In this document: piece by piece, positions 33,488-49,388 of the stretch
Layout: every line of letters begins with the position of its first letter
How positions within the stretch are numbered: the stretch's first letter is position 1
Origin: Adineta vaga
Lineage: Eukaryota > Animalia > Rotifera
NCBI GenBank assembly: GCA_021613535.1
Contig: CP075494.1
Coordinates: 11,532,001 to 11,596,000, forward strand
Direction of reading: 5' to 3'
DNA: 64,000 bases
Translations under genes and position numbers: made by a program
Notes under the pieces: generated by a model
The model's database searches: none
What the model saw: the letters and a program-made list of their open reading frames with translations, nothing else
Told to the model about the DNA's origin: nothing

Positions 33488-33989
33488 ATGCGTAACGAAC
33501 GTCTATTGACCGGTTATCGAGCTGTGAAGTAGATAATCTTAAATTTCCAATCGATTCATTATTTATCTGTTTCTTTTTTTGTTCTATAGAGGTGTTGGAC
33601 GAATGAACAAACGTGAAATTGATGAACTGGAACCCTATTTAGAAAAACGTAATGGTTTTACATGGTTACCGCAAAGTAATACTGATTATTATCAATCTGA
33701 AATCGATCATATAAATTTAAAACTTGCTGAAAATAAACGTGATCTTATGAATATATCGGATTATTTATTTTGGTCAATTGGAAATTTTTTTCTTTTTTTT
33801 GTGTTCGGAATTGTTTGTATTATTCTATCTGTACGTGTTCGTGAACATAAACGAACTAAAGACTATGAGACAACATTAAAAATTTCACAGAGAACATTAG
33901 TTATGAATATTTTTACATCAGTTCTAGGTATTAGTTTTCTTGTCACAATGCTTGCATTATTAATTAATAAATCATCAACACATTTCTGA
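33488..33989 (+). CDS. CD225/dispanin (IFITM-like) membrane protein
   Basis: 2 exons (intron ~33529-33589); DYLFWSIGNFFLFFVFGIVCIILSVRVRE...DY...S...NIFTSVLGI is the CD225 two-hydrophobic-segment pattern. Confidence 0.75.
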
Positions 33990-34613
33990 GAAATATTGAT
34001 TGTTTATGGTAAGATTTTTTTTCATATTTTCTAAAGATCGAAATATTACCTTTTTTTTCGCAATAAACAAATGATTGTAAATAATTATTCGTAAGCTTTT
34101 TCGTGTTTTTTTCTTTCTATACAATTTCGACTATGACGACATGAATGAAGGATACAAATAGCATATGTGTATCATTTTCGTTTCATTAATATGATCATAT
34201 ATTTTATCTTGCTAGTCGCTCTACATTAACAAAATAAGAAAGACAATGTTATTTTATTTGAATACAAAAAAAATACATATTCTGAAATCTTCTCATTAAC
34301 AAATTCTATACAATATCAATAACAATTAAGACAAGATTTCACATAAATTTCATCGATCCTATGGTTAACAAAGTTGCATAGAGATAACTGTCATTCAATG
34401 AAACAATAATGATGAGGAAAAAAACAGAAGCATATGTCACCTATTGATATATCAATACAGCTTATTTATACATTTTTTATTGACCATATGCAGTATTTAT
34501 TCGTTCCGCATGACGCCACAAGAGAAAGAAACTTTTTTTCTATCAATATATATTTATTTGTTTTGTCAGTGAATAATACATAGGTATATAAATATTTTTC
34601 TTTAGACGAATCG

Positions 34614-37600
34614 ATGCAATCTGAGAATAAACACAAAAATCGATCATTGATCGCTTTTGAACATGGTAGAAGTTTTTAAGAATGATTGAAATATGAAATA
34701 AATCGTTTTTCTTTATCCTTTTAGTGTCCAGATTCATACCTGTTCATATTGATATGTGTAAGAAGAAAAATATGGAAGAACATTTAACAATTTATTATGA
34801 TGTCGAAGGACTTGTTCTTCGACGAGGTCGAACATTTTCATTTATTATTACATTTAATCAAGAATTTAATACGGATAGATATCATCTATCGTTTATTTTC
34901 AAATGTCATACATGGATGAATTGTTCAGAAATAAAAATACCATTAAATGGTACATCAAATGATTGGTTAGCAAGGAGAATAATTACAGAAAATGAAACGA
35001 AGAATCGTATTCATATTCAAATCAGTTCTCCTTGTCATGCGCTTATTGGCAAATATTCTGTAAGAATATAACGATATGTTATTGTATTCATTCTAATAGT
35101 TATTTTTTTCTTCTCGAATATTAGCTTTTACTAGAAACATGTTCGACAGAGAAAGATCATCTTGATAAAAGAACTCTTTCTATGTTTCAATTCGAAATCG
35201 ATATTTATTTTCTATTTGATCCTTGGCAAAAAAATGACACTTGCAGTTTGAATTCTTTAGAACAAATTGATGAATATGTTATGAATGAACATGGACAAAT
35301 TTATCTCGGTTTATCTGAAATACCTCGATCTATTCCATGGTATTTTGGGCAATTTGAAGGTGTCGTATTATTAACTGCTCTTGAAGTTCTTCGTAAAATA
35401 CAAATATCAGCACAGTATTCTATCGATACATTGATTGTTCTTCGTATGCTTGCATCGAAAATTTGTTCAGAAAGGGGCACAAATAATGGTATATTTCCAG
35501 CAGCATGTGAAGATCGTCCATTTTTATGTCCAGACAATGAATATACGAGTAGTCCAATTATTTTAAAATTGTTTCATGAATCCGATAGTCAATCGATACG
35601 AAGAGATAGTGGCAATAATTGGCAACATGTGGCTGTATTTTGTAGTTTATGTCGATCGTTGGGCATTCCTTGTCGTATCGTTACTATCTACAATGCAACT
35701 TGTCCATTTGAAGAAAATATGAACCAACAACAACAATCATTGATGATGACTACTCAAAAGACGAAGAATCGGTAAGAAATTATTCTAGAAAGTTAAATAT
35801 TCTTGATCTATGTATTTTCTAGACCATGGTATCTATGGAATGAATGTTGGTTACATCGAACTGATTTACCACAAGATTTCAGCGGTTGGCAAGTAATTAA
35901 TTCATCGTTCATTCAATGTGGAAATCGTAAATAAATGTTATAGAATTGATTTGTTATATCACTTATCTTTTCATAATTTAGCACTCCGACGTATTGGTCC
36001 ATGTTCAGTTATGGCTTTGAAGTATGGTTCGTTAGATTTCAAATGGGATACGAAAGAAATTCATAGTATGCTGAATGGAAATAGAGAATTAATTAGTAAG
36101 TGTGAATTAAATTTTTTTTAAATTATTTTTATATTGGATCTATTTCATAGGAACGGAAAACAATGCAATTCGTATTAAAATTATTACGAAAGCATTGCAA
36201 AATGATCAACAATACGAAGATCTTACGAACAATTATATGTCAAATGAAAGTGTGTAATCATAAAATTGTTCTCTATTCTATTATTGTATTTTCAACTTTG
36301 ATAGTATCTAAGAAGACAACAAGAACTGATGATGTTGATATCGATATAAGAACACCTCATAGTATAAAAGTAAACAGTATGAATTTGTATTAGATGCTTT
36401 TTTTCTATTCCTATTATTTATTTAGAATGGTGATGATCTTCCTTTTTTGCTTATTACAAATAATCGATCAAATTCATATCGAACATTAAAAGTAACTTTA
36501 ACTATAGTAGAAGTCAATTGCATCGATCATTCTCATGTTTTAAATTCACAAAAATTCCATCAATCATTGACTTATACTTTTCCATTGAATCATTATGAAC
36601 GTAAGTATAATCAGAATGTAAATTGACTAGAAGTTCATACTCTATTATTTAGAGAAAGGAATACGAATGAAATTGGAAGAAACACAAGATATACGTAAAA
36701 GATGTTTCGATAGTATTTTCAAACTATCTATACATGGAATTGTCAAAGAAACGAATCAAATCTATCAAGTAGAAAAATATATTTTAAATGAAGAAGCCGT
36801 TTCAATGAAATTAGTAAGGCAAAATAAACATTAATCCGATAAAATTCTAGTATGTTCTCTAGTTTCTTCGTCATAACGTTACTGAAATAGACGAAACAAT
36901 CAAACTGAATGTACAAATAAATAATTTATCATCGAAACCACTAAATAATGGACGTATCACAATCAATGGCTTAGGAATAATTAAAACATTCCGTTCAAAG
37001 TAAGATAAGATCAACAGTTTTCTATGACAGAAAAATATAACAACTATCTATATATAGAATACCGATAGTGTCCAAACAAGTGGCGAATATCCCATTTGAA
37101 ATTCCAACTTTGCGGTTCGGTGTCGGTCACTTATATGTAACATTTTCAACTGATTCCTTGCGTCTTCCTCCAGAATCTATCTTATTGGAAGCAATACCGA
37201 CGAAATTTGAACGTTTGGGTACTACTAAAACTGTGCCAAAGAAAACACAAAATGTTCCCCGTTCACAAGACAAAGCTGAATTTAATCAATCATCTAATCG
37301 AACTGGAAAAGATACAAGAACGGAATTCACACCAAACAGCATATCTGAAATAAAACAACCAAGTATTTCTATTAAATCCATTTCGATAGAGAAGCAAGAA
37401 GCCAAAGACTCGCCTAGTACAGCATTTATTACGTCTGCACAATCCGATGCTTCTATCAATAAACAAGCGAAGGGTGACATGGCTATCAAATTGGACAAAG
37501 TTCCATCAATCAATCAACCTACCTCTTCTACAATTATTTCAACTAATAAAGATGACACACCTATCATTCATAAATCCCAACCATATCAAATTCAATCAAT

Positions 37601-40600
37601 AGCTGACATCAAAGACAAATCACACAACAATGAAGTCGACACTGTTACACTAACGAAAATACCTTCCAACCAGACTCAAAAACCAACAACTTCAAAAGCA
37701 GTTGTTACTCAAAGTCCAATGCAGGCCAACGATCAAGAATCAGCTACATCTTTGATACACGAACATTCCGAGAAACCAACACAAAACATACCTGTAACTA
37801 CTGCGGCCCAGGATTCTTCAGAACCGCAATTGAAAACATCGATTACATCTTCTATTCCAATAAATGGAACAAATACCAACGAGAAACCTCAAGGAAACAT
37901 CCGTATGTACAACATGTCATCAACACAAAATGCAGTACCGAGCCCCACAACCCCTGCAGCCAAAGATCTCATCAAATCAACTACAAATCCTCTAAATCAA
38001 CAACAGTTACACGGTAACTTATCTCTCGATGATCAAATCGGGACCGCAAATCAAGTCGTTCCACCATCCAAAGTGAACCTCAACATCAAACTAAATACTT
38101 CGTCGGACAACCAAGCCTCCACAAAACTAATTCCTACTGTCCAAAAAGTACCTATCAACGACAAGATCCAAACAACAAGTACAACCAATAACCTAAATAA
38201 TACAAAAAACGACATAACATCCAAAAAAAACGGCCTTTTATCGCAAAGCCATCCCTCAACAACTTCCCCTGCAGACATCAAAACAACTCACGATATCGTT
38301 CCACCAACCACTGCCATAGCGCAAAACTCACAACAAACTATCTCACCTTCTCAAACAGATTTAGGGACAAAAGTAGAATCAAATATACCCACAGCTCCAT
38401 TCATCAAACAGCCATACACAATACCAATGACCGAAACCAAGGATAAGACAATGGAAAAATATGCCGATAAAAACACAAACGTCCCATTCGGAGAAACGTC
38501 ATCCATTGAAACACCATTTGACACTATATTTCATGACGAAACGAAATTAAACACAATTAAAACTACCGAAACACAACCGTCAATCGAAACGGAATTCGAT
38601 AGTACTAAAAACCAAACTAACTCGATGCATTCTAATGTCGCAGTTGAATCCACATCCTTTCCCGATAGAGTGACAGATACTACTCTAAAAGGCGAAATGC
38701 CCATCGATTCAGTAAACACACTAGGAACCACCGTAACAGTGGCGCAACCAATCAATATTAAAGACACCCGAGAACAGCCTAAATATACTGATACGAAACA
38801 GCGATCCGAAATTTCACTCGACCAACCACTAACAACGCGACCAAACAAAAAAGACACCGCAGTTCCTAGTCACGACTTCGGAGCACGATCATCTCAAGAC
38901 AAACAATTCAATAACAATCACAGCGAACCCGAGCACCGAAATCTCAATGTCAAACTTGACTCTGAACCATCCGTCGACAAAACCATCGAAACTACCATGA
39001 AAGACGCAAAGAAAGATGTCCATGAGAAACACGCATCCACACCATCGATCGACCACCCACTTGAAACTATTATACGAGCGACGAAGAACGATGCTGATGT
39101 GAAACTAGAATCTTCACCGTTGATCGCCAAACAAATTGAATCTGCTATCCAGGAAGAGAAGAAACAGGTTGAGACCACACTCGAATCCACAGTATCCGTT
39201 GAGCAACGAACTGGAACTACTCTGCAAGAGGAGAAGAAGGCTGTTGAAGAAACACTCAAATCTAACCCATTGGTGGAAGAACCAACTCAAACTGCTATCG
39301 AGGGAGAGAAGAAACAAGTTGATACCACAACCGAATCCACTGTATCGCTTGAGAAACTAATTGAGACCACTCTGCAAGAGCAAAAGAAGGATGTTGACGA
39401 AAGCCTCAAATCTACTCCGTTGGTTGACAAACCAACTGAATCTGCTATCCAGGGAGAGACGAAACAAGTTGAGACAACACTCGAATCCACAGTATCGGTT
39501 GACAAACCAACTGAAACTACTGTGCAAGAGAAGAAGACGGACGTCGAAGAAAGCCTCAAGTCTACCCCGTTGGTTGAAGAATCAACTCAAACTGCTATCG
39601 AGGGAGAGAAGAAACAAGTTGATACCACAACCGAATCCACTGTATCGCTTGAGAAACTAATTGAGACCACTCTGCAAGAGCAAAAGAAGGATGTTGACGA
39701 AAGCCTCAAATCTACTCCGTTGGTTGACAAACCAACTGAATCCGCTATCGAGGGAGAGACGAAACAAGTTGAGACAACACTCGAATCCACAGTATCGGTT
39801 GACAAACCAACTGAAACTACTGTGCAAGAGAAGAAGACGGACGTCGAAGAAAGCCTCAAGTCTACCCCGTTGGTTGAAGAATCAACTCAAACTGCTATCG
39901 AGGGAGAGAAGAAACAAGTTGATACCACAACCGAATCCACTGTATCGCTTGAGAAACTAATTGAGACCACTCTGCAAGAGCAAAAGAAGGATGTTGACGA
40001 AAGCCTCAAATCTACTCCGTTGGTTGACAAACCAACTGAATCCGCTATCGAGGGAGAGACGAAACAAGTTGAGACAACACTCGAATCCACAGTATCGGTT
40101 GACAAACCAACTGAAACTACTGTGCAAGAGAAGAAGACGGACGTCGAAGAAAGCCTCAAGTCTACCCCGTTGGTTGAAGAATCAACTCAAACTGCTATCG
40201 AGGGAGAGAAGAAACAAGTTGATACCACAACCGAATCCACTGTATCGCTTGAGAAACTAATTGAGACCACTCTGCAAGAGCAAAAGAAGGATGTTGACGA
40301 AAGCCTCAAATCTACTCCGTTGGTTGACAAACCAACTGAATCCGCTATCGAGGGAGAGACGAAACAAGTTGAGACAACACTCGAATCCACAGTATCGGTT
40401 GACAAACCAACTGAAACTACTGTGCAAGAGAAGAAGACGGACGTCGAAGAAAGCCTCAAGTCTACCCCGTTGGTTGAAGAATCAACTCAAACTGCTATCG
40501 AGGGAGAGAAGAAACAAGTTGATACCACAACCGAATCCACTGTATCGCTTGAGAAACTAATTGAGACCACTCTGCAAGAGCAAAAGAAGGATGTTGACGA

Positions 40601-43600
40601 AAGCCTCAAATCTACTCCGTTGGTTGACAAACCAACTGAATCCGCTATCGAGGGAGAGACGAAACAAGTTGAGACAACACTCGAATCCACAGTATCGGTT
40701 GACAAACCAACTGAAACTACTGTGCAAGAGAAGAAGACGGACGTCGAAGAAAGCCTCAAGTCTACCCCGTTGGTTGAAGAATCAACTCAAACTGCTATCG
40801 AGGGAGAGAAGAAACAAGTTGATACCACAACCGAATCCACTGTATCGCTTGAGAAACTAATTGAGACCACTCTGCAAGAGCAAAAGAAGGATGTTGACGA
40901 AAGCCTCAAATCTACTCCGTTGGTTGACAAACCAACTGAATCCGCTATCGAGGGAGAGACGAAACAAGTTGAGACAACACTCGAATGCACTGTACCGGTT
41001 GAGAAACTAATTGAAACCACTCTGCAAGAGCAAAAGAAGGATGTTGACGAAAGCCTCAAATCTACCCCGTTGGTTGACGAACCAACTCAATATGCTATCA
41101 AGGGAGAGAAGAAACAAGTTGATGCCACACCCGAATCCGCTGTACCGGTTGACAAACCAACTGAAGCCACTTTACCAGAGAAGAAGACGGACGTCGAAGA
41201 AAGCCTCAAATCTACCTCATTCGTTGAAGAATCAACTCAATCTGCTATCGAGGTAGAGAAGAAACAAGTGGATACCAAATTCGAATCCTCAGTATCCGTG
41301 CACGAACCAACTGAATCCACTTTGCCAGAGAAGAAGACGGACGTCGAAGAAAGCCTCAAATCTACCTCATTCGTTGAAGAACCAACTCAAACTGCTATCG
41401 AGGTAGAGAAGAAACAAGTGGATACCAAATTCGAATCCGCAGTATCGGTTGAGAAACCAATTGGGACCTCCGTACAAGATGAAAAGAAGGCTGTTGAAGA
41501 AACTCTCAAATATACTCCGTTGGTTGAAAAACCAACTGAATCTGCTATCGAGGGAGAGAAGAAACAAGTTGATACCACGTTTGAATCCACAGTATCCGTG
41601 CATAAACCAACTGAATCCACTGTGCCAGAGAAGAAGAAGGCTGTTCAAGAAACACTCAAATCTACTCCGTTAGTTGAAGAATCAGCTCAATCTGCTATCG
41701 AGGAAGAGAAGAAACAAGTTGATACCACACCCGAATCCACAGTATCGGTTGAGAAACCAATTCGAAGCACCGTGCAAGAGGGGAAGACCGACGTCGAAGA
41801 AAGCCTCAAATCTACCCCGGTCGTTGAAAAACCAACTGAATCCGCTATCGAGTTAGAGCTGAAACAAGTTGATACCATAGTCGAATCCACTGGATCGTTT
41901 GACAAACAAATTGAAACCACTGTACAAGAGGCAAAGAAAGATATTGATGTAGAACTGGAGCCGTCATCCTATGAAGACACTCGTAGTGAGACTATTGTGC
42001 GAGAAGACAAGAGGAAAACGCATGGCGCAGTTGATTATACACTATTGATTGAGAAACCAACTGAATCCAGTGTGCAGGTGGAGAAGAAGGAGGTTGATGA
42101 TGAGCTCAAATCTACACAGTCGTGTGACAAACCATTGAGAATTAATATGCAACAGGAGAAAAATGATGAACAGGTAGAATTGGACCCTTCTGCTTATGAA
42201 GACACTCGAAGTGAAACTATCGTGCGAGAAGACAAATGGAAAACCCATGATGCTGTCGAGTACACATCGCCGATGGAAGCACCGATTGAAAGTAGTACTC
42301 AAGAAGAGGAGAAAAATGTTAATACTGAACTCGAATGCACAACTTTCGTTAATAAACCAAATGGTAGTGCTTTACATGAAGAGAAGAATGAGATTGGCGT
42401 AAAATTTGAATCTACATCATTGGTTGATAAAACACCTGAAACTAGATTACAAGAGGAGAGGAAGGATGTTAATGGAAAGCTTGGATCTGCACTGTCGATC
42501 GACACATCAATCAGAACTTCGATGCAAGAGGAGAAAAAGGATTTTAGGGTAGAACTCGGTGTTTCATCCTCGGAAGACACGGGAAGTGAAGCTGTTGTGC
42601 AAGAAGACAAGAGTGAAACCGATTCGGCAAAGGAGTCTGCGCTGTTGATTGAAAAAATAATTGAAACTACGGTAGAAGAGGAGAAGAAGGATGTTGAGAT
42701 TAAGGTTGAATCTACACCAGCCGTCAACAAACGATTGGATATGACGGTGATAGACGAACTGGGAGAAAATATTGATGGGAAACTGGAGTCTGTACTTCCG
42801 ATTGTGAAAGCAGTTGGGACGAATGTTGTGGAAGGAACGAATGGATTAGCTGGAGATGTAAATTTGGAAGAGGAAGAGGAAATGGAAGCTGATGGGAAAC
42901 ATGGATCAATGGTTGAGACGAAGAATTTGTTCAATAGTGCATGGATAGAGAGTGAAATGAAATTGAGTAATGGAAAGGTGAAAACAACTTCGTTCTCGAG
43001 TTCGTCGGATAGTAGTTCGATGGAAGAAGAGACGAAGGAGGTCGATTTCGATTTGGAAAGCATGCCAGAAGTCGATAAAGCGCTGGATACTGATATGAAA
43101 ACTGAACTCTTGACAGAAGTGGACAATATGCTCGATAGTATGGTAAAGGAGAGTGAAACGAAAGCTAATGATAGGAAATTGAAAACAATGTCAATCGTGG
43201 AAGAAAGTTTGGGATCAAAACCGGCGAAGGATGAATTGCTGAATACTGAGAGAATTGATGGTGAAGTCCAATGCCTGACAACTTTCGAGATACTCAAAGA
43301 AGTTATTGTGAATGAAATAGTGAAGAAAGAGTTGTTACCGGAATTCAATAATGTGGTGCAAATTGACAAACCATCGGAAATTATTCTCATTGAATCGGAA
43401 AAGAAATATATTCAGGAAACTTTAAATACGGATGTTACGGAAGGTGAAGTTTCGGACACTGTCGTGAAAGATGAAGACAGGAGTAAGATTGACATGGAAT
43501 TGGAGTCAGGTTTGGATGAAGTAGAAATGGGTGATTCTAATGTCAATGTTGTGATGTCGAAGATGAACGTGATGAGATCATCTTCACCTGTCGAAAAAGT

Positions 43601-46600
43601 TCAACATGATAATTCTATGGACATGAAGGCATCGGATACAACGAAAGTGGATGAACATGAAGATGTGAACGTAATGAAGCAGTTGACACCGCCTAAGCAT
43701 GATGCAGCTATAAAGTTGGACGATGTGAACCCATTAGATGACGAATTAAGATCTTGGATAGATGATCTTCTGCGCAAAATCTTACTGTCCAATCGATCAA
43801 TATTGCATACGGATTCTTTGAAAGCGACGATAGAGGAAGATGAACAACCGACAGATACTGACCTGCGAAATTGGATCGATAGTATGCTCCATAAAATTTC
43901 ACAATCCATTCGATTAAAAGTGTTGAATGAAAAAGACAAGTCACCTTTAATTATCGGTCAGAAGAAAGAGACAGAAGATGAAATTGATGAATCAACTGTA
44001 TCCGTACCAGTGATATCTCATGAATTCGATACTGTTAAGTTAACGCAATACTTATCAGCAGAAGAGAACATCATTCATCCAACAGATGCTGAGCTAAGAA
44101 ATTGGATCGAAAGTTTACTTCGAGAAATTTCACTATCGAATCAAGCTCAACGTCAGAATGTGGAACATATTACACATACGACACTAACTTCTGAAGTAAT
44201 AACAACAAACGATCTACTTCAAGATAATCAACTTACTACTACAAGAAAAATCGAGCAGAAAAAACTGGCTATTCAAGATCGACCTGATCAACATTCTTTC
44301 GCTAGAGAAACGGATGAAACAACAGTAGACAAAGATTCAAATCTGGCAGATGATGACATTCAACGTTGGATCAATGATTTATTACGTAAACTTTCTTTAT
44401 CTACTAAAACAGATCTGGACAATGAAGAAAAATTAATACCTTCACGCGGGAATAGCATTGGTGAAGATGACAAGACATTAGAAAACTCAGTATCGGATGA
44501 AGATTTGAAAGGTTGGCTTAAACATCTCCTCGATCATATACGTTCAGCAGATGAAATAAAATTTAATAAACAATATGAAACCCTAGACCATTCCACATGT
44601 TTACTGGAATCAAACACGGATTGGGAACTGAAGAAAACGAAAGATAGTGCACACAATCACGATAGTATATTTTCTGAAGAGACGGTACTTGCCAACAATG
44701 ATCATACTTTACCGAATTCTGTTATTGAGTTGGTTAATGAGATAGATGGCGATGGATCGATGACAACAACAACGGCTGGAACTATACTCAATGTTCCATC
44801 AAAAAACTTGCCTGATGATGTTATAGAAGCAGTTGTAGAACGTGATATCGATACAATGGTATTATCGCTTGCGACTGAACATAAGTCTGATATATTTATT
44901 TCGGAGAGATTTGAACATCATTGTCAAAATACGGTCCAAGATATCATTCCGCCATCAGTTATGGATATTATTGATGAGCTAACTGGAAACGTGGAAGCAA
45001 ACAAAGATGAAAATACATTAGTCAAACACGATGTTCTTGCTCTTTCCTCGTCACCACCTAGTGAACAATCTGTGAAAATAAATACAACGGAATCTATAAA
45101 TATAGAATCAATACCAGAGACCGTGGTACTTGATTGTTCTTTCCGAAATAGTATGGACTTTGTTGAAAAAATGTCGACTGATCATTCATCAAAAAATTCT
45201 GATAACTACGCTTGTTCTCCATTGGAACAAACATCATTGGCAGAGAACGAACCATCAATAGATGACGATTTAAGAAGTTGGATCAATGATTTACTGTATC
45301 AAATTTCACTATCAAAACAACCCGATGAGAACGATGAGAACGATCTACGAGATTGGCTTACGCATCTACTTCATCAAATATCTCAATCGAATCAAACAGA
45401 ACTACATGAAGATAAGCAAAGGTTATTAGAAGACGACGAACTGCCAGCAGATGTTGATTTAAAAAATTGGATCGACGATTTACTTTGGCAAATTGTTCTG
45501 CCAAAGCAGCCTGGTGCGCACGACGAGAAGAGCACACTAGTAGAAAATGAAGTGGACCCTACTGATGACGATCTCAGAAGCTGGCTTACGCAACTACTGC
45601 GTCAAATATCTCAATCAAATGAAACAGAATCACATGCCGAGAACAATATAGGTGAACTATCTTATTTAAACGTTCCTGAACAGATAGTATTAGAGGACGA
45701 CGAACTATCGATAGATGACGATTTAAGAAATTGGATCAATGATTTACTGTATCAAATTTCACTATCAAAACAACCCGATGAGAACGATGAGAACGATCTA
45801 CGAGATTGGCTTGTGCATCTACTTCATCAAATATCTCAATCGAATCAAACAGAATTATATGAAGATAATATGGATGAACTATCTTCCTTAAACGCTTCTG
45901 AACAAATGATAGACAAGGATCTAAGGGACTGGATCAATCATTTACTTCGTCAAATTTTCTTCTTAAACGAAACAGAATTAAACGATAAAGGCGATGGTTC
46001 ATTGTCAGTCAATAGTAATAACTTTTCTACTCAATATTCGATAAATGCAGAATCGGATGAAAATATGAAAGAATGGCTAGATAATCTGTTTGATCGGATG
46101 ATTATCAACGATGAAAAGAAAGATTTTCCAATTTTAGTTGCAGACAATTCTGATCAAACTAGTCTGAAATCCATTACAATCGAAACATTTCGAACAACAA
46201 TAACAATTGTAGAACATGGTGTAAACTTCAAGGAGAATTCAGATACTGAAGATTCCTTAGAAGAACTTATCGATGGACTAACATCTTCACGGTCAACATC
46301 AATATCGAGCGTTGAAGAGAAAGAAATAAACGAATTGATGCACATTTATAATCAAGTGAGCGACTCTTTAGTTGACAGTATATTCGAAAGTCTGCATATT
46401 TCTCGAAATACAACAGCAGATTCTCTATACAAAGAACTAGAAGATAATGATAATCCAGAAGAAACGGTGAATTTATATGCAGAAATCATAGCCGAACGTA
46501 TTCGGTTAGATGTAATTAGTGATATAGATTCAATATTCAGTGATCCATCTATGGTAACTTCAATGTCCGATAGTGACAGTATATCAGATAGTGATGGCTT

Positions 46601-47069
46601 AACTTATCATACAGCTGATGAAGCATTATTCGAAACAAGAGATGGACGATCAGGAACTCAATCAACACTGGCTGATTATATGTCATTTACGGATGAAATA
46701 AGAACTGATGACGATTATACCGATGAGGATGAGGATGAGGATGAGGATGAACTACTTGAAAGCTTGCCAGATGGTATTGCATTGTATGCGAATCTTTTAT
46801 CATACAAATTGGTAAAATCTGCTATATATTTATACAAAAGCCAGTTGAATGAATTATTAGCAATGAATGAAACTTCTCAAGCAGAACTAACTCCCACTCT
46901 TGATGATAAAGTTCGCTCGAGAAACGTCTTCATTCCTATAAAATCGAATCCTGAAGATTCTTCGAAAAATTCAACTAATCATAAACTAGTACGTGAAGAT
47001 ACGTTAACAGAAACGAATTCTGATGAATCATTCGATGAGCAGAAGAAAACAAACTCTTTTGTACCATAA
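34614..47069 (+). CDS. Giant transglutaminase-fold pseudoenzyme with a ~3,300-aa repetitive C-terminal extension
   Basis: TG N-domain N..EHLT..Y...LVLRRGRTF; core FLFDPW...EYVMNEHGQIYLG...PWYFGQFE; CRSLGIPCRIVT; WNECWLHRTDLP...GWQ; IGPCSV. About 10 short exons splice in frame into a 37058-47069 terminal exon. The start codon is uncertain. Confidence 0.85.
38950..42720 (+). repeat. Coding hierarchical tandem repeat (75-bp / 25-aa monomers, 300-bp higher-order unit; near-perfect core 39283-40986)
   Basis: Sequence lines 39301, 39601, 39901, 40201, 40501 and 40801 are identical; ~5.7 units of 300 bp; degenerate monomers on both flanks. Confidence 0.97.
43731..46110 (+). repeat. Dispersed coding repeat D-x-D-L-R-x-W-[IL]-x-x-L-L-x-x-I-S (13 copies)
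   Basis: Seen directly in the translation; includes a DNA-level duplication, ~45255-45415 vs ~45708-45868. Confidence 0.9.
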
Positions 47070-47476
47070 CAACTAATACTATACAAATAAATTTATATTT
47101 AGCAATTTTCAATCAAATCAATACTTTTTTTCTATTCAGTATCATTGTTTTGCTAAAAAAAAAGTTGAATCGGATAAAACAGAATGAAAATGGTTTCAAG
47201 AAAAATAGCAATGATATAGGCAACATACATGCATAGAAAAGTTGAAGGAAAAAAAGAGGAAATTGCATGTTCAATTATTAAAGTTTCTCTCTCTCTCTCT
47301 TATCGCTATTAGTTAGTGAAGTAAAAATACAGGAAAGAACATTTTTTTTTTCTTATATGTTATTTGTAGTGCAAAGAATAAACGTTTCATATTGATGCTC
47401 TACATATAATATATACAACACAAAACATCTTGATTTCAAACGTTCCCAACTTCGAACAAATTGAGCATTATTAAAG

Positions 47477-49388
47477 ATGGTAAGTTAAAACTTAGTGTTT
47501 TGACAAAATGTGGGAGTTTGATCTAATTCAAAATGGCAATATATCTAAAAATATAATAAAAAAGAAACGAGAGAACACGGAAGTTTAGTAAAATTTTGAT
47601 AGCTTCAAGGATCGATTATTTTAGACTAATGGAAACTATATCTTTTCTTAATGAAAGAAATACTACGTGTAATTTTGGTTTTAGAAATCAGCAAATGATA
47701 ATCAACAATCAACTGAACATGAAGATTCGATGACTATGATTGTAAGTCTTAAATCTTCACTACGAAAAATCTTGTTTTTATCTTAAGTAACTTTTTATTC
47801 TATTCAAATTAGACGAAAGAAGGAAATAAATAAAAAGACTCTTTAAACTTCTTAGCCTATATTAATAAGTGATTAAAAACAAGTTAGAAGAAAGCAAATA
47901 TCTTATTTATTTTCTTTGTAGTTATCCGAATGTCTAATACAACAGAATGACAAACCACTATCAAATCGATTACAAATGTCTTTGACATCATCTTTGACTG
48001 AAACTTATAGACCAACGACAACGTCTGCTGTTCTTGAAGAAAGTATTCGACGAACAGTCTCATCAGGTATCAGATCTACAGTAATTTCTCCTTCACCAAT
48101 ACCATTGCGCACACGATCATGTTTTCAATTACATTCATTAATATTCAAAAATGAACAACAAATTGTTCAACAATCTACTATCGTGAATACATCGAGTACA
48201 AATCAAATTAATATTAGTCCAAGAACAAATGTATCCTTTGAAACAACAGTGACTGATCAGGATGAAGCAAAAAAATACCAATCAACTGTAATTTATAAAT
48301 AATATCTTCTATATAGAATCATTCTTTATTTATTATGATTTTAGACGAATATTTCTCAACGTCATTCCAAAACTCGACGATTTAAATCAGGAAAGAAATG
48401 CAAAGACATAGAACACGATATGGAACGAACCAAAGATATCGATCAATCTTCTTCGATGATTTCAACCGGAAACTATGATTATAAAAGTCCGTTTACAAAA
48501 GAATATGATCTAGCTATTCTCTCACAAGCACAATTCGCCACTAATAATAGTTATACTAATGAATGGAATTTAAAAGATTTTTATCGTGATGTCAAAACGC
48601 CATTTGAACTACATACAAATACCAAAGACGTATTTGAAAAATGCCTTAAATTAGCTAGGTAATTTTATTCAGTTATTAGCAAATGTTGTTTACCAGTTTC
48701 TTTTTTCTCTTAAAACTATTTATAATTATGAGAAGTGCTTTAAAATGATTATTTATATACGGTCAAATCTATTATTCATCAATAGTTATTAATTTAAAAT
48801 GAGAGCAGAAAATATTTTTTACTAATTAAATTTTGAAAAGTAATAATGGATTCTTTTAGATTACAAGCCATAACAATCAAATGGGAACAACGTCGACGTC
48901 CTAATGAAACAACATATAATCGTTCGATAAAATCTGCTGCATCAGATCGTACTACAACATTAAGTTTAAGTAGTACTATATCATCGAAAACGACTTATAA
49001 TGAAAAGGATATTCAAGAAATTGGCGAAATAAAACATGATTTACGTTGTAATGAATGTAAACGTTTCCTATGTGCTGGTAATTGTATCGGTCCATCAGCA
49101 GCAGCATCAGCAGCAGCAAATATGCGTGATTCACTGCAACGAAAACTTCATTCTCGTTCAGCACGAACAGTAGCTACTCATTTACGTCCTCGTACAACAC
49201 AACATACATCACGTGAAATCAAATCAAAATCCGTAAATTCTGTTGTTCTTACACCATCTTTTACTAATGAATCACAAATGAAACGTTCACCAACACAATT
49301 TAATAATGGTTTTCTTCCTGGAAAATTAATTCGTACACATCGTCAAGAAACATTAGCATTGATTACTACACAGAAAATTTCAAGCTAG
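47477..49388 (+). CDS. Uncharacterised S/T/R-rich protein with a CxxCxxxxCxGxC motif
   Basis: Exons 47477-79, 47685-47741, 47922-48288, 48345-48658 and 48861-49388 splice in frame; motif LRCNECKRFLCAGNC; no family recognised. Confidence 0.65.

What the first reader, a model, noticed from the sequence alone, without database searches (positions are those of the whole stretch)
34614..47069. Giant catalytically dead transglutaminase fused to a 10-kb repetitive exon: candidate new structural or scaffold protein
Seen: the TG fold motifs are present but the whole catalytic triad is substituted. GQCWVF becomes GNNWQH (Cys to Asn, 35617-35619), WNFHVW becomes RPWYLW (His to Tyr, 35830-35832) and GWQxxD becomes GWQVIN (Asp to Asn, 35899-35901). 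The gene is nonetheless open and spliceable, and continues into a ~3,300-aa tail made of a T/S/P/N-rich segment, an E/K/T/S repeat array, Trp-helix repeats and an acidic end. Known: erythrocyte band 4.2 is an inactive TG-fold membrane-skeleton adaptor, but it is ordinary in size. Inference: this is a ~3,900-aa band-4.2-like anchor with a long disordered tether. Recurrent KKQV and QE motifs put Lys next to Gln, so the tail could be cross-linked by active TG paralogues (integument or cortical lamina) or act as a hydrophilic desiccation protectant.
Basis: partly seen in the sequence, partly recalled or inferred. Interest (0 to 1): 0.88.

Follow-up and report, generated by a model that had tools for sequence, protein, structure and literature searches.

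The report
Giant dead transglutaminase scaffold in rotifer
This is a real, expressed 3,966-residue gene of the bdelloid rotifer Adineta vaga, in which a transglutaminase fold that has lost all three catalytic residues is fused to a 3,300-residue acidic repeat tail; it belongs to an undescribed rotifer/acanthocephalan clade, most of whose members lack the catalytic cysteine, and its two bdelloid branches are the only animal-type transglutaminase genes found in this genome.

Summary
Eleven exons (34614-47069, + strand) give a 3,966-codon frame. Intron-less contigs from three public studies show all ten GT..AG introns removed, including 36999|37058, which joins the transglutaminase (TG) exons to the 10-kb exon. 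One contig carries the bdelloid spliced leader 8 nt before the ATG.

Alignment to factor XIII and to 41 other TGs places Asn, Tyr and Asn at the Cys/His/Asp positions. An AlphaFold model (pTM 0.84) is a complete four-domain TG. The giant exon supplies the last three strands of barrel 2, and no order is predicted beyond it.

The gene is already in NCBI as a "hypothetical protein" of Adineta vaga. That 4,335-aa model probably swallows the downstream gene.

Cys-less relatives occur across bdelloids, and relatives mostly without the Cys occur in acanthocephalans. Together they form a clade apart from other animal TGs. Type A (this gene) has long, fast-changing acidic repeat tails; type B (paralogue on C2) has short ones. 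The TG head is under purifying selection (omega about 0.22).

No Cys-bearing animal-type TG was found in the genome, so cross-linking by "active paralogues" has no candidate enzyme. The most likely function is a non-catalytic, band-4.2-like scaffold, but this is inferred, not shown.

The parts
34604..34605 (+). Acceptor AG for spliced-leader trans-splicing; the mRNA body starts at 34606, 8 nt before the ATG
   Evidence: The X7 contig carries 12 loose letters, CAACTTACCAAG, before 34604. CAACTTACCAAGAG followed by GT occurs 44 times in the genome and 0 times in the control. Bdelloids have a 23-nt spliced leader (PMC1925144).
34614..34665 (+). Exon 1 (start codon 34614-34616)
   Evidence: Joint 34665|34725 in X1 and X7; the peptide matches P0001 at residue 1
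34725..35059 (+). Exon 2: Transglut_N beta-sandwich
   Evidence: Pfam PF00868, 4.3e-19; joints
35125..35771 (+). Exon 3: first part of the TG core, with Asn (35617-35619) in place of the catalytic Cys
   Evidence: Pfam PF01841, 2.7e-7; alignments to 1g0d and FXIII; codon check
35823..35926 (+). Exon 4: rest of the core, with Tyr (35830-35832) for His and Asn (35899-35901) for Asp
   Evidence: FXIII alignment 372-398; multiple-alignment columns
35982..36999 (+). Exons 5-10 (35982-36095, 36151-36249, 36305-36369, 36426-36600, 36653-36813, 36863-36999): end of the core, barrel 1 and the start of barrel 2
   Evidence: Joints; phase arithmetic and match to P0001; AF2 strands
37058..37220 (+). Start of exon 11: the last three strands of TG barrel 2 (protein aa 631 to about 678)
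   Evidence: AF2 strands 637-646, 651-660 and 669-676 with pLDDT about 90, then below 50; joint 36999|37058 in three studies
37221..38954 (+). T/S/P/N/Q-rich low-complexity linker (aa about 685-1262)
   Evidence: Composition table; no Pfam match; covered by spliced contigs up to 39000
38955..42815 (+). E/K/T/S/V repeat region built on 25-aa units. The core array 39109-41930 has a 300-nt period and 9.4 copies, and four to five central units are identical at the nucleotide level
   Evidence: TRF; 25- and 100-aa periodicity; exact 1,236-nt run at offset 300
42816..43736 (+). Acidic non-repetitive stretch
   Evidence: Net charge -10 to -15 per 100 aa
43737..46118 (+). Thirteen copies of a ~21-aa amphipathic Trp-helix motif (acidic, acidic, D-L-R-x-W-I/L-x-x-L-L-x-x-I-S)
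   Evidence: Regex hits: 13 here, 15-16 in the two A. ricciae orthologues, none in Rotaria or Didymodactylos; invariant columns in A2; predicted as isolated helices at low confidence
46119..47069 (+). Conserved acidic C-terminal region ending in TAA at 47067-47069. It includes an FFAT-like Y-H-T-A core (46599-46625), a D/E run (46722-46751) and an amphipathic helix (46782-46835)
   Evidence: Alignment with A. ricciae; omega 0.39; coordinates
47086..47091 (+). AATAAA poly(A) signal 17 nt after the stop
   Evidence: Sequence

Best explanation
SHOWN: this is one SL-trans-spliced, 11-exon gene of a bdelloid rotifer; its public protein record names Adineta vaga. It encodes a 3,966-aa cytosolic-type protein with no signal peptide and no membrane segment. 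The first ~680 residues form a complete four-domain animal transglutaminase fold in which Cys, His and Asp are replaced by Asn, Tyr and Asn, so it cannot form the thioester intermediate. The remaining ~3,290 residues have no Pfam match and no confidently predicted fold where that was tested, carry a net charge of about -330, and fall into a T/S/P-rich linker, about 1,300 aa of 25-aa E/K/T/S/V repeats, 13 amphipathic Trp-helices and a conserved acidic end. The head is under purifying selection. It belongs to a clade of TG-like proteins in bdelloids and acanthocephalans; all bdelloid members lack the Cys, and one partial acanthocephalan protein keeps it. INFERRED mechanism: it acts as a pseudoenzyme scaffold. 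The dead TG head serves as a protein-binding anchor, as protein 4.2 does in the red-cell membrane skeleton. The repeat region serves as a long polyanionic entropic spacer or spring, comparable to titin PEVK or neurofilament side-arms. The array of helices and the conserved C-terminal motifs serve as a multivalent docking end. The protein would thus tether or space cytoplasmic structures. I put the identity at about 0.95 and the scaffold mechanism at about 0.5.
For: - **Splicing and 5' end:** one search shows ten GT..AG joints in three studies. One 4,162-nt contig spans exon 2 through more than 1.9 kb of exon 11. Searches give the spliced leader.
- **Frame:**
- **Triad:**
- **Fold:** (pTM 0.84, ordered to about aa 678; TM by target 0.77-0.82 to closed TG2, TG3, FXIII and protein 4.2).
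- **Constraint:** (head: dN 0.18, dS 0.84, omega 0.22 over 635 codons against A. ricciae).
- **Conservation of the architecture:** orthologues with long acidic repeat tails occur in A. ricciae (4,865 and 4,985 aa), A. steineri (at least 2,137 aa, partial) and Rotaria socialis (1,677 aa). The repeat sequence differs in each genus while its character is kept.
- **Clade:** (SH-aLRT 100).
- **Tail:** no membrane segment, net charge -328; no Pfam domain.
- **No active TG in the genome:**
Against: - No partner, localisation or phenotype is known.
- The tail model is unusable (pLDDT 30.7), so the disorder claim rests on composition and on a shallow alignment.
The rest of the 10-kb exon is supported only by its open frame and by conservation of its C-terminal third.
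- The middle of the tail is not conserved in sequence and contains nucleotide-identical units, so part of its length may be recent, unstable or mis-counted in the assembly.
- The runs are labelled 'RNA?' by guess. That they are RNA is inferred from the intron-less contigs.
Confidence: 0.6

Rival explanations
1. The protein is mainly a substrate: its Lys- and Gln-rich tail is covalently cross-linked by an active transglutaminase into an integument or lamina matrix.
For: The tail holds 288 Lys and 160 Gln. K and Q are adjacent or one residue apart 76 times, against 53.5 +/- 7 in shuffles.
Against: No candidate enzyme was found. Transglut_N and a canonical clam TG hit only this gene and the C2 paralogue, and both lack the Cys. 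The other Transglut_core hits look like PNGase, KY-like, DRC7-like and bacterial-type proteins, by my reading of their motifs. The K/Q excess comes from one repeat unit copied many times.
Confidence: 0.08
2. The tail is a hydrophilic desiccation protectant (an LEA-like molecular shield), and the TG head is only a carrier or anchor.
For: The tail is highly charged and hydrophilic, and no order is predicted for it. The organism tolerates drying (general knowledge about bdelloids). The largest tails are in Adineta.
Against: There is no LEA or other Pfam match. The repeat is 25 aa with regular prolines, not the 11-mer helix-forming LEA unit. No expression data under drying were available here. The C-terminal helices and motifs are conserved like docking sites, not like bulk filler.
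Confidence: 0.12
3. Only the head and the conserved C-terminal third are functional. The central ~2,000 aa is a nearly neutral, unstable repeat expansion whose length carries no function.
For: Four to five units are identical at the nucleotide level. The repeat sequence is unrelated between Adineta species and Rotaria. Tail length runs from about 950 to about 4,300 aa among orthologues.
Against: Every type-A orthologue keeps a long acidic E/K/P/V/T/S repeat region in frame, which argues that bulk and charge are selected even if the sequence is not.
Confidence: 0.15
4. The fusion is an artefact: the TG exons and the 10-kb ORF are separate genes.
For: The public models around this locus are unreliable in both directions. 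The A. vaga model adds the downstream gene, and the A. ricciae models add part of an upstream gene.
Against: The joint 36999|37058 is seen in contigs from three studies. Barrel 2 of the TG fold is split across that joint and folds with pLDDT about 90. The same architecture occurs in four other species.
Confidence: 0.02

Closest known systems
Erythrocyte protein 4.2 (EPB42)
   Same: Four-domain TG fold with the catalytic Cys replaced, acting as a non-enzymatic adaptor. It is a structural match (7uzs / 8cs9_X, TM by target 0.78) and a sequence match (7tvz_E, 3.3e-14).
   Different: EPB42 is a 691-aa vertebrate paralogue. This protein lies in a separate rotifer/acanthocephalan clade. It has lost His and Asp as well as Cys, begins MQSE so has no Gly2 for myristoylation, and carries a ~3,290-aa tail. 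Its partners are unknown.
Catalytic animal transglutaminases (FXIII-A, TG2, TG3, hemocyte TG, annulin)
   Same: Transglut_N, the core and two C-terminal barrels, in the closed conformation; about 20-35% identity.
   Different: The triad Cys-His-Asp reads Asn-Tyr-Asn. Those enzymes are about 700 aa and have no repeat tail.
Bdelloid type-B Cys-less TG (A. vaga I4U23_007798 on C2, 1,196-aa model)
   Same: Paralogue, 55% identical over exon 3. It also has Asn for Cys and an acidic E/K/S/T/P tail. The downstream neighbour gene is homologous too.
   Different: It keeps His and Asp. Its tail is only about 270 aa and has no Trp-helices.
Entropic spring and spacer regions (titin PEVK, neurofilament side-arms)
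   Same: Long, charged tandem repeats of about 25-28 aa rich in E, K, V, P and T, with no predicted order. This comparison rests on my knowledge of those proteins, not on a search.
   Different: No sequence homology was detected. Here the net charge is strongly negative, and the repeats are attached to a TG head rather than to Ig/Fn3 or filament domains.

Membership tests
Animal (papain-like, four-domain) transglutaminase family | N-terminal beta-sandwich (Transglut_N) | tested here: met
   PF00868, 4.3e-19, 69.5 bits against a cut-off of 27
Animal (papain-like, four-domain) transglutaminase family | Transglutaminase core domain | tested here: met
   PF01841, 31.3 bits against a cut-off of 23 on exon 3; PDB hits to TGs down to 1.5e-17
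Animal (papain-like, four-domain) transglutaminase family | Two C-terminal beta-barrels | tested here: met
   Pfam Transglut_C was not detected on single exons, but the AF2 model has both barrels and aligns over about 720 columns with whole TGs
Animal (papain-like, four-domain) transglutaminase family | Catalytic triad Cys-His-Asp (needed for membership as an enzyme) | tested here: not met
   Asn294, Tyr348 and Asn371 at the aligned positions. The protein is a homologue by fold but not an enzyme.
Protein 4.2 (EPB42) | TG fold with the active-site Cys replaced | tested here: met
Protein 4.2 (EPB42) | Orthology with vertebrate EPB42 | tested here: not met
   The tree puts the bdelloid and acanthocephalan proteins in a clade (SH-aLRT 100) outside 30 other animal TGs, including vertebrate TG2-like and FXIII-A. 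EPB42 itself was not a row; its position inside the vertebrate TGs is established knowledge.
Protein 4.2 (EPB42) | N-terminal myristoylation (Gly2) | tested here: not met
   The protein starts MQSENK
Protein 4.2 (EPB42) | Binding to band 3 / ankyrin-type membrane-skeleton partners | not testable with these tools
   No partner is known, so no test was run
LEA / hydrophilin desiccation proteins | Match to LEA family profiles or 11-mer repeats | tested here: not met
   No Pfam family on the tail at E up to 10 other than chance-level hits. The periodicity is 25/50/100 aa.

The most novel reading that the evidence does not exclude
Bdelloid rotifers have no catalytic animal-type transglutaminase at all and keep only TG-fold pseudoenzymes, inherited from a clade shared with acanthocephalans. 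The giant type-A protein would then be a lineage-specific structural element of the syncytial cytoplasm, for example a spacer or tether of the intracytoplasmic lamina that defines Syndermata, anchored by the dead TG head and docked through its 13 Trp-helices and its FFAT-like C-terminal motif.
Probability: 0.15. Interest if true: 0.8.

Novelty: new variant of a known kind. Interest (0 to 1): 0.6.

Why it matters
Protein 4.2 was the only inactive TG-fold protein that came up in the full-text searches here or that I know of. This gene represents a second, independent loss of catalysis. The loss is old: it is shared by every bdelloid genus found here, and related proteins, mostly Cys-less, occur in acanthocephalans. 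It is maintained by purifying selection. It is also combined with one of the largest tails seen on a TG fold: among the 150 best hits of an exhaustive search, only the Adineta proteins exceed 2,000 aa.

If bdelloids truly lack any catalytic animal-type TG, they are a natural test of which TG functions need catalysis and which need only the fold. The protein also offers a tractable case of a huge repeat region that changes its sequence quickly but keeps its character.

Tried and rejected
- **Head-to-tail binding:** Complex prediction of the TG head with a pair of Trp-helices (window:45252-45401) returned "no answer" (score 0.00, controls not run). This is no evidence either way.
- **Fold of the last 689 aa:** AF2 with a 3-row alignment gave pLDDT 30.7. 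The model is unusable and was not sent to fold search.
- **ESM Atlas feature search of the same part:** no usable hit.
- **Pfam on the tail, whole and in five pieces:** only chance-level hits. The best was Phage_int_SAM_4 at 6e-5, below its cut-off. There was a weak Ish1 hit (0.13) on one Trp-helix.
- **Other copies of the tail in the genome:** none.
- **DNA of the second A. ricciae copy (P0003):** not on record. The planned unsaturated dN/dS between the two A. ricciae copies could therefore not be done, and the A. vaga/A. ricciae estimate has dS near saturation.
- **Literature:** no paper on rotifer or bdelloid transglutaminases, nor one linking them to the intracytoplasmic lamina.
- **Reads on the 3' part and on the 47061-47684 interval:** the single read-laying run had been used on 34400-39000, so these were not tested.
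- **Joined model:** Exons were searched by reference, and the public protein P0001, checked exon by exon as identical, stood in for the joined head.
Full report
**What genome this is.** The window is C5:11532001-11596000 of a 100.8-Mb, six-contig genome. It has about 30% G+C and introns of about 50-60 nt. The public protein identical to the exons is "hypothetical protein I4U23_025649 [Adineta vaga]", so this is the bdelloid rotifer A. vaga.

**Gene structure and expression.**
- Three-frame translation of 34500-37200 suggested eleven exons.
- Laying contigs of four public runs on 34400-39000 gave ten joints, all GT..AG: 34665|34725, 35059|35125, 35771|35823, 35926|35982, 36095|36151, 36249|36305, 36369|36426, 36600|36653, 36813|36863 and 36999|37058.
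- All ten joints are seen in X1 and X7, and most also in X11; these are three different studies. X10 contigs run through the introns and are genomic DNA.
- One X1 contig of 4,162 nt runs from exon 1/2 to beyond 39000, so the TG exons and the giant exon lie on one transcript. The runs are labelled RNA only by guess; their intron-less contigs are what show a processed transcript.
- The exon lengths sum to 11,901 nt, which is 3,966 codons plus TAA at 47067-47069. Every exon peptide sits at the expected index of P0001.
- The X7 contig begins with 12 letters that are not in the locus, CAACTTACCAAG, immediately before the AG at 34604-34605. The extended word followed by GT occurs 44 times in the genome and never in the control.
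- Bdelloids trans-splice a 23-nt leader onto more than half of their mRNAs (PMC1925144). The mRNA is therefore SL-trans-spliced 8 nt before the ATG at 34614, which fixes the 5' end.
- An AATAAA lies 17 nt after the stop.

**The head is a complete but dead transglutaminase.**
- Pfam finds Transglut_N (4e-19) and Transglut_core (above its cut-off).
- PDB sequence searches align GNNW to GQCW of factor XIII and sea-bream TG. They also align W-Y-L-W-N-E-C-W to Y-H-C-W-N-E-A-W, and G-W-Q-V-I-N to G-W-Q-A-V-D.
- Asn294, Tyr348 and Asn371 therefore replace Cys314, His373 and Asp396 (FXIII numbering). A 42-sequence alignment agrees.
- An AlphaFold model built on that alignment has pTM 0.84 and is ordered from residue 20 to about 678.
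- Foldseek matches it over about 720 columns to closed TG2-GTP, TG3, the FXIII zymogen and protein 4.2, with TM by target of 0.77-0.82.
- Exon 11 starts at residue 631 and provides strands 637-646, 651-660 and 669-676 of barrel 2. The fold itself therefore needs the 36999|37058 joint.

**The tail.**
- Exon 11 encodes 3,336 residues. After barrel 2 come a T/S/P/N/Q-rich linker and an E/K/T/S/V region with 25-, 50- and 100-aa periodicity.
- The core array of that region (39109-41930) has 9.4 units of 300 nt, and four to five of them are identical base for base.
- An acidic stretch follows, then 13 copies of a 21-aa amphipathic Trp-helix motif and a conserved acidic C-terminal region.
- The tail has 686 D+E against 358 K+R, no hydrophobic segment (maximum Kyte-Doolittle score 1.09) and eight Cys.
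- No Pfam family matches. The genome holds no second copy, and the Atlas gave no hit.
- The AF2 model of the last 689 aa has pLDDT 30.7, with isolated helices at the Trp motifs. That fits disorder, but it may also reflect the three-row alignment.

**Relatives.**
- The word-based search found two A. ricciae proteins of 4,985 and 4,865 aa with the same architecture.
- The exhaustive HMMER search with exon 3 found a tight group, with E from 1e-92 to 1e-26, ahead of ordinary TGs. Every member in which the motif could be located lacks the Cys: the motif reads GNNW, GSNW, GQNW, GTNW, GKDW or GTIW.
- The named members come from A. steineri, Rotaria socialis and Didymodactylos carnosus. The next tier comes from the acanthocephalans Neoechinorhynchus and Pomphorhynchus.
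- A second search found the type-B proteins, including the A. vaga paralogue on C2 (1,196-aa model).
- In a maximum-likelihood tree of 47 TG modules, the 12 bdelloid and 5 acanthocephalan or unnamed rows form a clade with SH-aLRT 100, apart from 30 other animal TGs. Inside it, Didymodactylos is sister to type A plus type B. The root was set at the midpoint only.
- Type A has Cys>Asn and His>Tyr everywhere. Asp>Asn is found only in A. vaga.
- Type B has Cys>Asn or Asp and keeps His and Asp.
- One partial Pomphorhynchus protein keeps the Cys, so the loss may not be complete in acanthocephalans.
- Type-A tails are all long, acidic and repetitive. Their units are unrelated: A/P/V/E in Rotaria, H/E/V/K in A. 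steineri and E/K/T/S/V in A. vaga. The Trp-helices were found only in A. vaga and A. ricciae; the partial A. steineri sequence stops before that region.

**Selection.** An exon-by-exon Nei-Gojobori comparison with the A. ricciae locus L028 gives dN 0.18, dS 0.84 and omega 0.22 over 635 head codons. The alignable C-terminal parts of the tail give omega 0.31-0.39. dS is near saturation, so these values are rough, but the head is clearly not evolving neutrally.

**No active paralogue.**
- Transglut_N matches only this gene and the C2 paralogue, and a canonical clam hemocyte TG finds the same two loci only.
- By eye, from their motifs, the other Transglut_core matches look like PNGase, a bacterial-type protein, KY-like proteins with repeated domains, and DRC7-like proteins. 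I did not confirm those names with a family search.
- The searches are exon-wise and give lower bounds, so a very divergent enzyme could have been missed.

**Gene models.**
- The public A. vaga model (4,335 aa) drops 50 aa inside the array. It also leaves exon 11 at 47060/47061 through a 624-nt GT..AG interval to 47685, adding 421 aa.
- Those 421 aa correspond to a separately called 428-aa gene in A. ricciae (L028:20044-21743). A homologous gene also lies downstream of the C2 paralogue.
- Both A. ricciae models end at the position equivalent to 47066.
- Together with the AATAAA, this makes 47069 the likely end of the gene. I had no read call left to test it.
- Conversely, the A. ricciae models begin with about 65 aa that match the separate small membrane-protein ORF at 33579-33989 here. 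The spliced leader at 34604 argues against that fusion in A. vaga.

**Interpretation.** What is shown is the gene, its transcript up to about 39.3 kb, the dead triad, the intact fold, the constraint on the head and the clade. The function is inferred: a non-catalytic scaffold with a TG-fold anchor, a polyanionic spacer and a multivalent helical docking end. The substrate model lacks an enzyme. The desiccation-shield model lacks any LEA-like feature or expression data. The single complex prediction (head plus a Trp-helix pair) gave no verdict.

**Method note.** The joined spliced model was never typed or searched. Exons were searched by reference, and P0001:1-745 stood in for the head.

Noticed in passing
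window 34604-34613; G000 clusters at C5:9.88-9.93 Mb, C5:10.91-10.93 Mb and C2:8.68-8.69 Mb: The mRNA carries the bdelloid spliced leader. The leader word followed by GT occurs 44 times in the genome, mostly in clusters and often as inverted pairs about 165 nt apart; these are presumably SL RNA gene arrays.
   Followed up: partly
window 47061-49385: The public A. vaga model I4U23_025649 joins the giant exon to a downstream gene (exons from 47685 to 49385) through a 624-nt interval. In A. ricciae that gene is called separately (428 aa). It is probably an over-fused model.
   Followed up: partly
window 33579-33989: A small ORF encodes a protein with hydrophobic segments. Its first ~65 aa match the N-termini of the A. 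ricciae TG gene models, so either those models are over-fused or the upstream exon is sometimes cis-spliced to the same acceptor.
   Followed up: no
window 39451-40986: About 1.5 kb of exactly identical 300-nt tandem units lies inside a coding exon. This points to recent amplification or concerted evolution, and the copy number in the assembly may be uncertain.
   Followed up: partly
window 42299-43390 (- strand) and 38531-41648 (- strand): Long antisense ORFs (up to 363 aa, plus a ladder of 90-aa ORFs every 300 nt) lie inside the giant exon. They look like by-products of the purine-rich repetitive coding strand rather than genes.
   Followed up: no
window 46599-46625 and 46782-46835: A conserved L-T-Y/F-H-T-A core follows a Ser/Asp tract and resembles a phospho-FFAT (VAP-binding) motif. 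A conserved amphipathic helix (L-Y-A-x-x-L-S-x-x-L-x-x-S) resembles kinase-anchoring helices. Both resemblances are recalled from memory and were not tested.
   Followed up: no
G000 loci L003-L008 (C4:11.79 Mb, C5:4.59 Mb, C2:8.39 Mb, C1:13.92 Mb, C4:9.06 Mb): A family of KY-like Transglut_core proteins with an intact Cys and many repeated ~90-aa domains. Several start with MGC, a possible acylation site.
   Followed up: no
G000:C2:6471001-6491000 (L014, L015): The type-B paralogue locus has homologous ORFs (T-N-D-Y/F-T-Y-R-T-E motif) both upstream and downstream of the TG gene. The public model I4U23_007798 fuses the upstream one to the TG head (240 extra N-terminal aa).
   Followed up: no
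window 38000-44000: G+C rises to 40-45% inside the giant exon, against 30% around it, and the GC skew flips from -0.19 to +0.31 across the array. This is a compositional effect of the repeat codons.
   Followed up: no
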